A stretch of DNA of 64,000 bases from Saccostrea echinata (lineage: Eukaryota). Position numbers and translations under genes: made by a program. The notes under the pieces are model-generated. The model was not told the DNA's origin and ran no database searches. It saw only the letters and a program-made list of their open reading frames with translations. Positions 33,463 through 35,433 of this stretch are shown piece by piece (within the stretch, counting starts at the first letter, position 1; every line of letters begins with the position of its first letter). The stretch spans positions 36,580,001-36,644,000 of the forward strand of contig NW_026889750.1 of NCBI RefSeq assembly GCF_033153115.1, given 5' to 3'.

Positions 33463-35433
33463 TTACACTGATGAATTTCCCCCACTGTCCTTGTGTCCAA
33501 CTTTACCAGTGTTACTTTTCCCATAATAACCCTTGCGTGCTGCTATCATGATATCTAAGGTATCCAAAGCGCTCTTTTGTCCTTCTTCACTTTTACTCAG
33601 TGATTTTATATTACTTCTTTTCCTTAGGTACATTGCAGATAGTTTTAATGTAGCGATGGATTTGAAAACTTCGCCATTAGTCGGGTGGTCAGAAAGAAGA
33701 TGTGACTTCTTCATTGATTCCACGTGAGCCGGTGCTATGGCCATGACATCTTTGTGGCTTGTGGGAAACCGGTCGATGACTGGATTTCCGAAACTCTCCG
33801 ACTTTTCGACAATTCGGAAATATTCTTTAAAAAATTTAGGGCGATAACCTATTCCAGCCATGATGTAAATGACCTGTAAATTTAAAAATAATCTAATAGT
33901 CATCTATATTAAAGAAGATGATATTTTACATTACTTATACTATTTTCTCCCTTAGCAAATTTTACTACATTTAACTGATTCACATTAGGGTTTATCCTTA
34001 TAATCCAAGGGAGCGTAGCGGACTGAAAACTTTGGCTAGCAAAGATGACTAGGACCCTTTAGGTTTACAATTTGTAAACTTACTCAGAGCCGTATATTGA
34101 ACAACTCAAAAAATGATTTTTGTTTTAAATTTCTAGCAAGCTAATTTTTATACAAATAAAATATTAATTTGCAAAAAACTCACCTCCGTGCCGATCAGAT
34201 GCGGCCATGAAAACCATGCTACAGAGACGGATAGAAACGGAAAGCAGATCAAGGACAGTACTACAAATCCACAATTTTTACAGCGAGATTCTAGTGTTTT
34301 TCTCCTTTTGAGGAAGAACATGTGCAGAGATTCCCAATGAGTTACACCTATAACGAGAACAATTTAAATGTATTCTCTATTAGTCCCAGACGGAAAGATT
34401 TTTAAGATAATGACTTTTTTTTTTCTTAGAAAAAGACCTAATAAGAATATTTAAAGCTTCAATGAATTTGTATTCTAGTAAAGAAAATTTGTCCACCTGT
34501 TATAAAAGCTGGTATTTGTGATTCTGTCATATGAGATGACGCCTGTAGAAAAGATATTCCATAGCTCCATATGAGTGGATTGGTGTACCAATTGGTCGGG
34601 TTATACCAGGGGTTGTTCACAGTGCGATAACTGTAGTACCACAGGTTTCCCGCCATGTTAAGTACCGCTAACACTACTGTAGTAGCAACACCCCACAGGA
34701 CACACTTACGAATGAATCCCATAATGATATAGGCAATGCTTAAGACGCCAAAGAGAATGAGTGCACCATTGACAGAAAATGCATTTCCATAGCGAAGCTC
34801 TCCATAAATATTGAATTGGGCGAGAAACATCATGGACAACATGACGTTGGTTGGAATTGTGAAGAAGTGAACAAATTTAGCCAGCATGCCTTGATGGAAA
34901 ATATCAAAAGTGTACATCTGGTAGAGGAGGTCAAAAAAGTCCCATTGAACTCTGGGAACAATTAACCAAAAATTCAAGCACTTTTCGCAGCAGTTATCCC
35001 CCTCTATATTCGTGCACCCTGGGACCTGACCAAGATCCTCGGCATGGTCGTCAAAACTGACCGGATCTCGTTTGAGACACACTGTTTGCTGCTTTAACAC
35101 TTCTCTTTCCAGTGTTGCAAAGTTTTCTGTAAATTCTTTGAAGATTTTCGACGTCAAGAGACTATTTCGTCTCTGAGCATCCCAATGTTTCAATGATAGC
35201 AGATAAAATTCAATGGAATATTTACCTGCATCGTCAGTGCCTGGAGGGTGAGAAAACAGCTGTCCTTTGTAAAATACTATCCCGATCTCATCGTCTCCTT
35301 CATTCAACACTCTGTTTATATAGGACTGGAATCTTTTTTCAGCTTCGGCTCTTTCTTGTAATTTTGTAATTACTTGAAATGTTTGGGTATATATATGTAA
35401 TTCGGCAAGTTCATTTCCTTCAAATTCACCCAT
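33463..35433 (-). CDS. Mpo1/DUF962-like multi-pass membrane protein (putative 2-hydroxy fatty acid dioxygenase), ~503 aa
   Basis: Coding exons 35433-34497, 34347-34184 and 33873-33463 (GT-AG, phases 1 and 0, 1512 nt). In-frame TAA just upstream of the ATG. Motifs DIFH..K.VH..TIP, LQASSHMTESQIPA and E....GIGYRP parallel Mpo1 YH..N..H..VP, Q..GH..E..PA and E....GYRP. Gene model is strong; family call is by eye. Confidence 0.78.

What the first reader, a model, noticed from the sequence alone, without database searches (positions are those of the whole stretch)
33463..35433. Intron-containing Mpo1/DUF962-like dioxygenase gene in an animal genome
Seen: a clean 3-exon ~503-aa ORF with H180, H189, Q297-x3-H301-x2-E304-x3-PA and a late GYRP motif spaced by TM helices. 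Known: this pattern is that of yeast Mpo1 (YGL010w) and plant MHP1, ER membrane enzymes for alpha-oxidation of 2-hydroxy fatty acids from phytosphingosine (Mpo1 is Fe-dependent); mammals do this step with the lyase HACL2. Inference: this may be an unrecognised animal branch of the family, either ancestrally retained or horizontally acquired, giving a route to odd-chain fatty acids. The introns and host repeats around it argue against contamination.
Basis: partly seen in the sequence, partly recalled or inferred. Interest (0 to 1): 0.75.

Follow-up and report, generated by a model that had tools for sequence, protein, structure and literature searches.

The report
Oyster gene for divergent Mpo1-like membrane enzyme
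This is a real, expressed three-exon oyster gene whose membrane core is a distant relative of the yeast iron enzyme Mpo1, which shortens 2-hydroxy fatty acids, so some animals may keep a one-step route that mammals lack.

Summary
A three-exon, 503-codon gene lies on the minus strand at 33463-35433. It has GT..AG introns, and spliced transcript contigs confirm both junctions. It matches a public 503-aa record named "uncharacterized protein LOC133181379 [Saccostrea echinata]" at 100% identity over exon 1. All three exon translations are exact substrings of it.

Pfam does not recognise the protein or its 8 closest relatives. It belongs to an unmodelled family: 149 cluster representatives, found in bivalves, a sponge, a sea anemone, a green alga, Hemimastix and a few bacteria.

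Three results tie this family to Mpo1-like/YGL010w (PF06127):
- Profile-profile comparison gives 95.3% probability, E 2.3e-8, with clean controls.
- The motifs H-x8-H-x3-[IV]P and Q-x3-H-x2-E-x3-P-[AS]-F keep identical spacing.
- The two nearest predicted structures are PF06127 clusters.

The glutamate is variable in close orthologues. Co-location of the histidines could not be tested. Enzyme activity is inferred only. I rate it a new variant of a known kind.

The parts
34497..35433 (-). Exon 1 (coding): ATG at 35433, 312 codons plus the first base of codon 313. Encodes the DABB-like domain, a linker, His motif 1, four membrane helices and His motif 2.
   Evidence: Contigs of X1, X2 and X4 lie on it. 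Searched alone.
34348..34496 (-). Intron 1, 149 nt, GT..AG, phase 1. It follows '..ITG'.
   Evidence: One search gives the dinucleotides. The joint in X4 record 11 is 34346|34496 (cut +1). Many single-exon fragments of relatives carry the '..[IV][TS]G' motif within about 30 residues of their ends. The paralogue's reading frame is followed by GT at the same motif.
34184..34347 (-). Exon 2: 2 bases plus 54 codons. Contains W317-E318 and one long membrane helix.
   Evidence: Covered by X1 record 4 and X4 record 11.
33874..34183 (-). Intron 2, 310 nt, GT..AG, phase 0.
   Evidence: The joint in X1 record 4 is 33871|34182 (cut +2), with 0 mismatches. An X4 loose end at 33875 continues into a diverged copy of the end of exon 2.
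33463..33873 (-). Exon 3 (coding part): 136 codons plus TAA. Contains the G376-Y motif, the GNPxxD motif and the low-confidence C-terminal helical tail.
   Evidence: Contigs of X1, X3 and X4 lie on it; X1 record 1 runs on to 33428, so the 3' UTR is at least 35 nt.
35083..35403 (-). Residues 11-117: N-terminal alpha+beta barrel domain of the ABM/DABB (ferredoxin-like) type.
34852..34896 (-). His motif 1: H180-Q-x4-K186-x2-H189-x3-I-P194 (HQGMLAKFVHFFTIP), at the start of the first membrane helix.
   Evidence: One search gives the translation. H180 is invariant and H189 is at 90% or more in 57 sequences. The motif aligns to H15..H24..P29 of canonical YGL010w-type proteins.
34504..34545 (-). His motif 2: Q297-x3-H301-x2-E304-x3-P308-A-F310 (QASSHMTESQIPAF), at the end of the fourth membrane helix.
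   Evidence: H301 and P308 are at 90% or more. The motif aligns to Q121..H125..E128..P132-S-F of the canonical family with identical spacing.
33838..33849 (-). G376-Y-R-P motif. G376 is invariant in the family.
33772..33789 (-). G396-N-P-V-I-D: the family-specific C-terminal motif (consensus SGNPALD). It has no counterpart in canonical PF06127.

Best explanation
The locus is a genuine, transcribed oyster gene for a 503-residue multi-pass membrane protein with three parts.
1. An N-terminal ABM/DABB-type alpha+beta barrel (residues about 11-117).
2. A membrane core (about 160-400) that is a remote homologue of the Mpo1-like/YGL010w family (Pfam PF06127).
3. A poorly ordered helical tail.

The core keeps the family's three histidines (H180, H189, H301), the glutamate (E304) and the flanking prolines. 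The spacing is the canonical one: H-x8-H-x3-[IV]P, then four helices, then Q-x3-H-x2-E-x3-P-[AS]-F. An even number of helices separates the two motifs, so both should sit on the same face of the membrane, where they could bind one metal ion.

Shown here: the gene model, its expression, its homology to PF06127, conservation of the histidines, and the fold of the N-terminal domain.

Inferred: by analogy with yeast Mpo1 and the Arabidopsis proteins MHP1/MHL, the protein is a non-haem Fe(II)-dependent oxygenase acting on a lipid in the membrane. One-step alpha-oxidation of 2-hydroxy fatty acids to odd-chain fatty acids is the leading candidate reaction. The barrel domain may hold or present a hydrophobic ligand.

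The protein is not a member of PF06127 as currently modelled. It belongs to a sister family with no Pfam or NCBIfam model. That family has an extra C-terminal module and occurs sparsely in bacteria, protists, an alga, a sponge, a sea anemone and bivalves.
For: Gene and expression.

Family size: 27 hits among 756 candidates with exon 1. With a 9-sequence profile, 149 cluster representatives at E<=1e-3 and 102 at <=1e-10.

Homology to PF06127:
- hhalign of the family (A3, 57 sequences) against 24 canonical YGL010w-type proteins (A8): probability 95.3%, E 2.3e-8, 107 columns, P0001 176-309 against canonical 11-133.
- Controls: reversed A8 gives 1.4%, E 0.035; ten column shuffles give <=0.1%, E>=0.44.
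- The family profile itself found P0156 at E 1.5e-4 in 1.84 billion proteins. P0156 is a bona fide PF06127 protein (42.5 bits, cut-off 24).
- 20 of 57 family members have PF06127 hits at E<=1, far more than any other family in that scan (next: 2 members). So do 8 of 9 further family members tested, plus the anemone and Hemimastix proteins. All are below the cut-off.
- Atlas structure search with residues 150-400: the top two rows are PF06127 clusters (TM 0.51/0.38 and 0.49/0.71, 149 residues aligned over 166-382). The next row scores 0.32/0.12.

Residue conservation: H180 and G376 are invariant. H189, H301, P308, P309 and W317 are at 90% or more in A3. The Glu is at 90% or more in A4.

Lipid link: a START-domain neighbour in Aureispira and an AMP-binding enzyme immediately upstream in a Pseudomonadales MAG; a Polyketide_cyc (SRPBCC) match in one of the 57 members, probably P0152, the only A5 row with a long extra C-terminal region.

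Mpo1 function, as stated in passages of PMC10398889 and PMC8620032. MHP1/MHL was seen only as a reference title in PMC13584405.
Against: - No Pfam hit for P0001, for its exons, or for its 8 closest relatives, even at E<=10.
- PF06127 gives no match anywhere in the oyster genome in six frames.
- Against short two-helix PF06127 proteins, hhalign reached only 43-57% probability, and only over motif 1. The block containing motif 2 scored E 0.16.
- E304 is Glu in only 2 of the 9 closest sequences (Val in 6, Ser in 1).
- The family's [DN]E..ASPRL motif has lost its acidic pair in the bivalve/sponge clade.
- The Atlas structural match uses the Atlas's own poor model (pLDDT 0.51), and the TM by query is about 0.5.
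- Bacterial gene neighbourhoods are not conserved.
- The oyster genome also has at least one TPP_enzyme_N exon, so the lyase route may exist in parallel.
- No assay, no localisation data, no metal data.
Confidence: 0.6

Rival explanations
1. Same superfamily and metal site, but different chemistry. On this reading the family is an oxygenase (or other metal enzyme) acting on another hydrophobic substrate, such as a different lipid, a polyketide-like compound or a quinone. It would not be a 2-hydroxy fatty acid alpha-oxidase.
For: It is a separate family with its own conserved C-terminal module (SGNPALD, [DN]E..ASPRL) and a long insertion after motif 2. It is fused in bivalves to an ABM/DABB barrel. 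The structural neighbours of that barrel include cofactor-independent oxygenases and polyketide cyclases: SnoaB, WhiE-ORFI and OAC. One family member matches Polyketide_cyc. Genomes G002 and G005 carry both canonical PF06127 genes and this family, which suggests the two are not redundant. Only one subfamily of PF06127 has a tested function (recalled).
Against: The complete canonical ligand motif set is retained with exact spacing. No alternative substrate is indicated by any conserved gene neighbourhood.
Confidence: 0.3
2. A non-catalytic membrane protein that keeps the Mpo1 fold, for example a lipid sensor, scaffold or regulator.
For: E304 and the [DN]E pair are lost in most of the closest relatives. 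The oyster's own paralogue has Asp in place of the third histidine (the P0033 row). The family therefore does tolerate loss of the site.
Against: In this gene all three histidines, the Glu and the Pro-Ala are present. The histidines are invariant or nearly so across 57 divergent members. Differences from a relative about 90% identical fall mainly on third codon positions (30 of 40).
Confidence: 0.07
3. Contamination, or a recent transfer from a bacterium into the oyster assembly.
For: The family occurs in bacteria, including an Endozoicomonas-like symbiont lineage and Myxococcota.
Against: The gene has two spliceosomal introns, and spliced contigs confirm them. A 30%-identical paralogue on another contig shares the intron-1 position. 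Orthologues occur in four bivalve orders and a sponge. Host repeats and a GPCR gene flank it. GC content is 0.31-0.35, like the rest of the window. All 24 named bacteria fall on one side of a branch away from the bivalve/sponge clade (support 93; quick tree).
Confidence: 0.03

Closest known systems
Yeast Mpo1 (YGL010w) and Pfam PF06127 'Mpo1-like' (formerly DUF962)
   Same: The membrane core is homologous (hhalign 95.3%, E 2.3e-8). It has H-x8-H-x3-[IV]P before the first helix, four helices, then Q-x3-H-x2-E-x3-P-[AS]-F with identical spacing. The nearest predicted structures are PF06127 clusters.
   Different: It fails the Pfam cut-off. The canonical Asn between the two histidines (N20 in A8) is Ala here. 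There is an insertion of about 45 residues after motif 2, and an extra conserved C-terminal module (GY..GNPxxD). It also has an N-terminal barrel domain and a tail: 503 aa against roughly 105-220 aa for the canonical bacterial ORFs used here. Activity is untested.
Arabidopsis MHP1 and MHL (plant Mpo1 homologues)
   Same: They are reported to make odd-chain fatty acids from the 2-hydroxy fatty acids of sphingolipids, which is the function proposed here by analogy. I saw only the reference title (Ushio et al. 2023, Plant Sci 336:111840), cited in PMC13584405.
   Different: They are canonical DUF962 proteins, according to that citing paper's annotation of 'ER membrane protein DUF962'. I made no sequence comparison with them, because no plant sequence was available through the tools.
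Mammalian 2-hydroxyacyl-CoA lyases HACL1/HACL2
   Same: They do the same overall metabolic job, converting a 2-OH fatty acid to a fatty acid one carbon shorter (passages of PMC10398889).
   Different: They are unrelated thiamine-diphosphate enzymes that need CoA activation and three steps. The oyster genome has at least one TPP_enzyme_N exon, whose identity I did not resolve.
ABM / DABB dimeric alpha+beta barrel proteins (e.g. YjcS 1q8b, SPO2313 3fgv, SnoaB 3kg0, At3g17210 1q4r)
   Different: There is no sequence-level Pfam match to ABM or Dabb. The domain is fused to a membrane enzyme. No catalytic residues were identified. The sponge protein and P0023 lack the domain, and P0027's (truncated) model begins after it.

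Membership tests
Pfam PF06127 Mpo1-like (DUF962) | Scores above the curated Pfam cut-off (24 bits) | tested here: not met
   No PF06127 hit at E<=10 for the three exons, or for P0001 and its 8 closest relatives. No six-frame match in the whole oyster genome. More distant family members reach 15-19.1 bits.
Pfam PF06127 Mpo1-like (DUF962) | Homology detectable by profile-profile comparison with canonical members | tested here: met
   A3 against A8: probability 95.3%, E 2.3e-8, 107 columns. Reversed and shuffled controls give 1.4% or less. It is weaker (43-57%) against short two-helix members.
Pfam PF06127 Mpo1-like (DUF962) | N-terminal motif H-x8-H-x3-[IV]-P with a basic residue three positions before the second His | tested here: met
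   The oyster has H180..K186..H189..I193-P194. In the canonical alignment H15, H24 and P29 are invariant. The two motifs are aligned to each other.
Pfam PF06127 Mpo1-like (DUF962) | Second motif Q-x2-G-H-x2-E-x3-P-[AS]-F after the last helix of the core | tested here: met
   Q297, H301, E304, P308, A309 and F310 have the same spacing as Q121, H125, E128, P132, S and F. Gly124 is Ser here. The Glu is present in only 2 of the 9 closest relatives.
Pfam PF06127 Mpo1-like (DUF962) | Shared three-dimensional fold | tested here: inconclusive
   The Atlas search by structure with residues 150-400 gives PF06127 clusters as its top two rows (TM by row 0.38 and 0.71, 149 residues aligned). However, the Atlas model of the query is poor, pLDDT 0.51. 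No solved structure of either family exists to compare with.
Pfam PF06127 Mpo1-like (DUF962) | The three conserved histidines lie together to bind Fe(II) | not testable with these tools
   The models are returned without coordinates. There is only a topological argument: four helices between the motifs would put both on the same membrane face.
Pfam PF06127 Mpo1-like (DUF962) | Fe(II)-dependent 2-hydroxy fatty acid dioxygenase activity; ER location | not testable with these tools
   This needs expression and an assay. The properties of Mpo1 are taken from passages of PMC10398889 and PMC8620032. The primary papers are not held.
ABM / DABB alpha+beta barrel superfamily (N-terminal domain) | Ferredoxin-like beta-alpha-beta-beta-alpha-beta barrel of about 100 residues | tested here: met
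ABM / DABB alpha+beta barrel superfamily (N-terminal domain) | Sequence match to Pfam ABM (PF03992) or Dabb (PF07876) | tested here: not met
   No such hit at E<=10 for exon 1 or for the full-length relatives. Foldseek E-values are all above 1e-3.

The most novel reading that the evidence does not exclude
Bivalves, sponges and cnidarians retain an ancient enzyme of the Mpo1 superfamily that performs CoA-independent, Fe(II)-dependent, one-step alpha-oxidation. The characterised family is said to be absent from animals. In bivalves the enzyme is fused to a ligand-holding ABM/DABB barrel. It would contribute to the odd-chain and 2-hydroxy fatty acid profiles of marine invertebrate sphingolipids, in parallel with or in place of the HACL lyase route.
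Probability: 0.25. Interest if true: 0.7.

Novelty: new variant of a known kind. Interest (0 to 1): 0.6.

Why it matters
Mpo1 is the only one-step 2-hydroxy fatty acid alpha-oxidase known. As I recall from the primary literature, which I could not read here, its family is described as present in bacteria, fungi, protozoa and plants but not in animals.

This work shows that an unnamed sister family with the same metal-ligand motifs exists in several animal phyla. It has introns and is expressed. That gives sphingolipid biochemists a concrete candidate to test in the existing yeast mpo1-delta assay.

The work also defines a family of at least 149 sequence clusters that neither Pfam nor NCBIfam models. 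It links that family to a fold with no solved structure. It also records a new domain fusion (ABM/DABB barrel plus Mpo1-like core), which may say something about how the substrate is delivered.

If the activity differs from that of Mpo1, the family is still a new membrane metalloenzyme type worth characterising.

Tried and rejected
Searches that found nothing or little:
- Direct Pfam scans of the exons and of close relatives found nothing.
- NCBIfam found nothing relevant for 10 members.
- A sequence search of the PDB with the family profile gave only chance-level rows, E>=0.61.
- The Atlas search by features with the whole protein gave no usable hit.
- hhalign against a canonical set dominated by short two-helix PF06127 proteins was only suggestive (43% probability), and the motif-2 block alone failed at E 0.16. 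Switching to four-helix YGL010w-type proteins fetched resolved this.
- The Atlas feature hits to clusters holding Nucleocytoviricota proteins were not confirmed. Two scans of IMG/VR found no relative.
- Bacterial neighbourhoods: 20 flanking ORFs were scanned. Only a START-domain gene and an AMP-binding enzyme hint at lipids. Many ORFs in the GC-rich loci are probably spurious, and no conserved operon emerged.

Distribution:
- The family is rare in Myxococcota: 1 of 81 sampled genomes, and that one was the centre genome. Canonical PF06127 occurs in 34 of the same 81.

Tree:
- The tree is a quick search, rooted at the midpoint. It has four long branches and many rows of odd composition. I draw no donor or direction of transfer from it.
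- Rows left out: fragments under 180 aa and most single-exon fragments.

Literature:
- Four searches found no paper on an animal Mpo1-like protein. The library lacks most subscription journals, and supplements were closed and not consulted.

- Whether the TPP_enzyme_N exon belongs to HACL1 or HACL2 was not pursued.
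Full report
**Observation.**
The finding's coordinates hold a minus-strand gene. Exon 1 runs from the ATG at 35433 to 34497. Intron 1 (149 nt, GT..AG) follows. Exon 2 is 34347-34184. Intron 2 is 310 nt (GT..AG). Exon 3 is 33873-33463 and ends in TAA. Together these make 503 codons.

I searched the model exon by exon and did not join the exons myself. Exon 1 alone retrieved a public 503-aa protein, P0001, at 100% identity. 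A source names it "uncharacterized protein LOC133181379 [Saccostrea echinata]". All three exon translations are exact substrings of P0001. Full-length analyses therefore used P0001 by its id.

**Expression.**
The one run search found four runs whose kind is only guessed to be RNA. Laid on 33200-36200, their contigs cover the exons. No depth falls in the two whole bins inside intron 2 (33907-34108).

A contig of X1 with 0 mismatches joins 33873|34184. A contig of X4, from a relative about 90% identical, joins 34347|34497. An X4 loose end at 33875 continues into a diverged copy of the end of exon 2. Both junctions are therefore supported, one of them only in a relative. Nothing reaches 5' of the ATG.

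Of the 40 listed differences, 30 lie on third codon positions (p 8.5e-8). A further 87 differences were not shown by the tool.

**What it is not, by direct search.**
- Pfam gives nothing for the three exons at E<=10 other than one chance-level match for exon 2 (Zn_ribbon_LapB, E 0.057).
- Among P0001 and its 8 closest full-length relatives it gives only three unrelated chance-level matches, and none to PF06127.
- PF06127 finds no match in the whole oyster assembly in six frames.
- NCBIfam has no model for it.
- A PDB sequence search gives only chance rows.

**The family.**
Exon 1 found 27 relatives. They come from Mytilus species, Mercenaria, Sinanodonta and the sponge Dysidea avara, plus unnamed fragments. 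Many fragments carry '..[IV][TS]G', the intron-1 site, close to their C-terminal end.

A 9-sequence profile, run against 1.84 billion cluster representatives, found 149 proteins at E<=1e-3 and 102 at <=1e-10. Names recovered for some of them add:
- an oyster paralogue cluster (Crassostrea/Magallana),
- the sea anemone Actinostola,
- the green alga Chloroparvula,
- Hemimastix,
- Potamilus and Ostrea.

A pattern scan of 185,579 prokaryotic species genomes gave 29 loci. These are mostly Myxococcota and Actinomycetota, with single cases in an Endozoicomonas-like lineage, Aureispira and Spirochaetota. In an even sample of 81 Myxococcota genomes the family occurs in 1 (the centre genome), against 34 for canonical PF06127.

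Across 57 divergent members H180 and G376 are invariant. P160, Q172, H189, P286, H301, P308, P309, W317 and L363 are at 90% or more. The consensus motifs are:
- YQxYLxxIFH-x5-[RK]-xx-H-xxx-[MI]P
- QxxSHxxEPxLPPR
- [DN]ExxASPRLxP....GY
- SGNPALD

**Link to Mpo1-like proteins.**
Weak PF06127 hits recur in the family. They occur in 20 of 57 members at E<=1 (best 6.9e-4), in 8 of 9 further family members tested, and in the anemone and Hemimastix proteins. All score 15-19 bits, under the 24-bit cut-off.

The family profile also pulled out P0156 at E 1.5e-4. P0156 is a true PF06127 protein at 42.5 bits.

I took canonical PF06127 genes from Myxococcota genomes and cut out their ORFs. Against a set dominated by short two-helix forms, hhalign gave only 43-57% probability, over motif 1 alone, and the motif-2 block failed. 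Against 24 four-helix YGL010w-type proteins (A8) the tool's hhalign gives probability 95.3%, E 2.3e-8 over 107 columns. The alignment pairs these positions:

| Oyster | Canonical (A8) |
|---|---|
| H180 | H15 |
| K186 | K21 |
| H189 | H24 |
| P194 | P29 |
| Q297 | Q121 |
| H301 | H125 |
| E304 | E128 |
| P308 | P132 |

The reversed alignment scores 1.4%, and ten column shuffles score <=0.1%.

Independently, the Atlas structure search with residues 150-400 lists two PF06127 clusters first: 149 residues aligned over 166-382, with TM 0.71 when normalised by the 163-aa YGL010W-family representative. The next row scores 0.32/0.12. That search used the Atlas's own poor model, so I call the fold test inconclusive rather than met.

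**Structure.**
With a 115-row alignment, AF2 gives mean pLDDT 85.9 and pTM 0.78.

**Origin.**
A quick tree of 92 rows was built.
- It groups the bivalves, the sponge and the unnamed P0027 (support 96).
- Next come unnamed sequences, then the green alga.
- All 24 named bacteria lie on one side of a branch (support 93).
- The anemone protein sits in another clade made up of unnamed sequences.

The oyster genome has one paralogue on another contig (30% identity). That paralogue keeps the first two histidines, has Asp in place of the third, and shares the intron-1 position. With the introns, the flanking GPCR gene and host repeats, contamination or a recent transfer is very unlikely. The tree is unrooted and has long branches, so I do not choose between ancient retention and old transfers.

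**Function.**
The function is inferred. Mpo1 is described as the yeast 2-OH fatty acid dioxygenase that replaces the three-step HACL route of mammals, and as an iron enzyme (passages of PMC10398889 and PMC8620032). MHP1/MHL was seen only as a cited title. The primary Mpo1 papers are not held. My statement that three histidines are essential, and that the family is said to be absent from animals, is recalled rather than read.

Points against a simple equivalence:
- The Glu is variable in close orthologues (2 of 9).
- The acidic pair of the third motif is lost in this clade.
- The family has extra modules.
- Two bacterial genomes carry both families.
- The oyster genome has a TPP_enzyme_N exon.

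**Verdict.**
Four literature searches found nothing on an animal Mpo1-like protein.

Noticed in passing
window 14225-15298 (+): An intronless 357-aa ORF encoding a rhodopsin-family GPCR (7tm_1, E 1e-34, 120.7 bits). It is a host gene about 18 kb from the finding.
   Followed up: partly
window 20857-24981, 27552-28088, 29270-29532: A 46-bp satellite. The main array has 89.5 copies at 90% identity, with two smaller arrays of the same unit nearby. It coincides with strong GC and AT skew (-0.26 and -0.42 at 22001-24000).
   Followed up: no
window 33011-33328 and 33366-33400: A perfect 160-bp tandem duplication (2.0 copies, 100% identity) just beyond the gene's 3' end, followed by a T-run of about 35 bases. 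Transcript contigs stop at 33428, before reaching it.
   Followed up: no
window 42825-43141 and 43608-44674: Two 53-bp tandem arrays (6 and 20 copies) at 99% identity, with different units. They look like very young expansions.
   Followed up: no
window 6118-6747, 30533-31371, 39076-39955: A repeat family of about 165 bp sharing a core like ...GACCCCCGGGGGTAGGG(T/C)GGGGCCAC..., in short tandem arrays at three places. Probably a host interspersed element.
   Followed up: no
window 52754-53584: A 36-bp minisatellite, 23.6 copies at 90% identity. I confirmed only that the array exists.
   Followed up: partly
L070 1363-2493 (own genome, G000:C20:5782129-5782974): A paralogue of the gene. It has the barrel-like N-terminus and the first two histidines, but Asp in place of the third histidine, and it has lost E..PP. 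The intron-1 position is the same. It may be a catalytically dead or re-purposed copy. Its Crassostrea/Magallana counterpart cluster has 294 member sequences.
   Followed up: partly
L001 5070-5690, 5978-6601: In the Endozoicomonas-like genome, the family member is followed by two ORFs of about 206 aa with eukaryote-type RING fingers (zf-RING_2/zf-RING_11, E 1e-8 to 7e-10). A third ORF of equal size, at 7084-7707, was not scanned.
   Followed up: no
Atlas clusters, (no coordinates): The feature search of the core listed two unnamed clusters (222 and 288 aa) whose few classified members are Nucleocytoviricota. Two IMG/VR scans found no viral relative, so the lead remains open.
   Followed up: partly
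P0209 (Mytilus coruscus, 739 aa): A protein named 'Tyr recombinase domain-containing' carries a stretch 59% identical to this family over 27% of the query. It is probably a fused gene model or a mobile-element insertion next to a family member.
   Followed up: no
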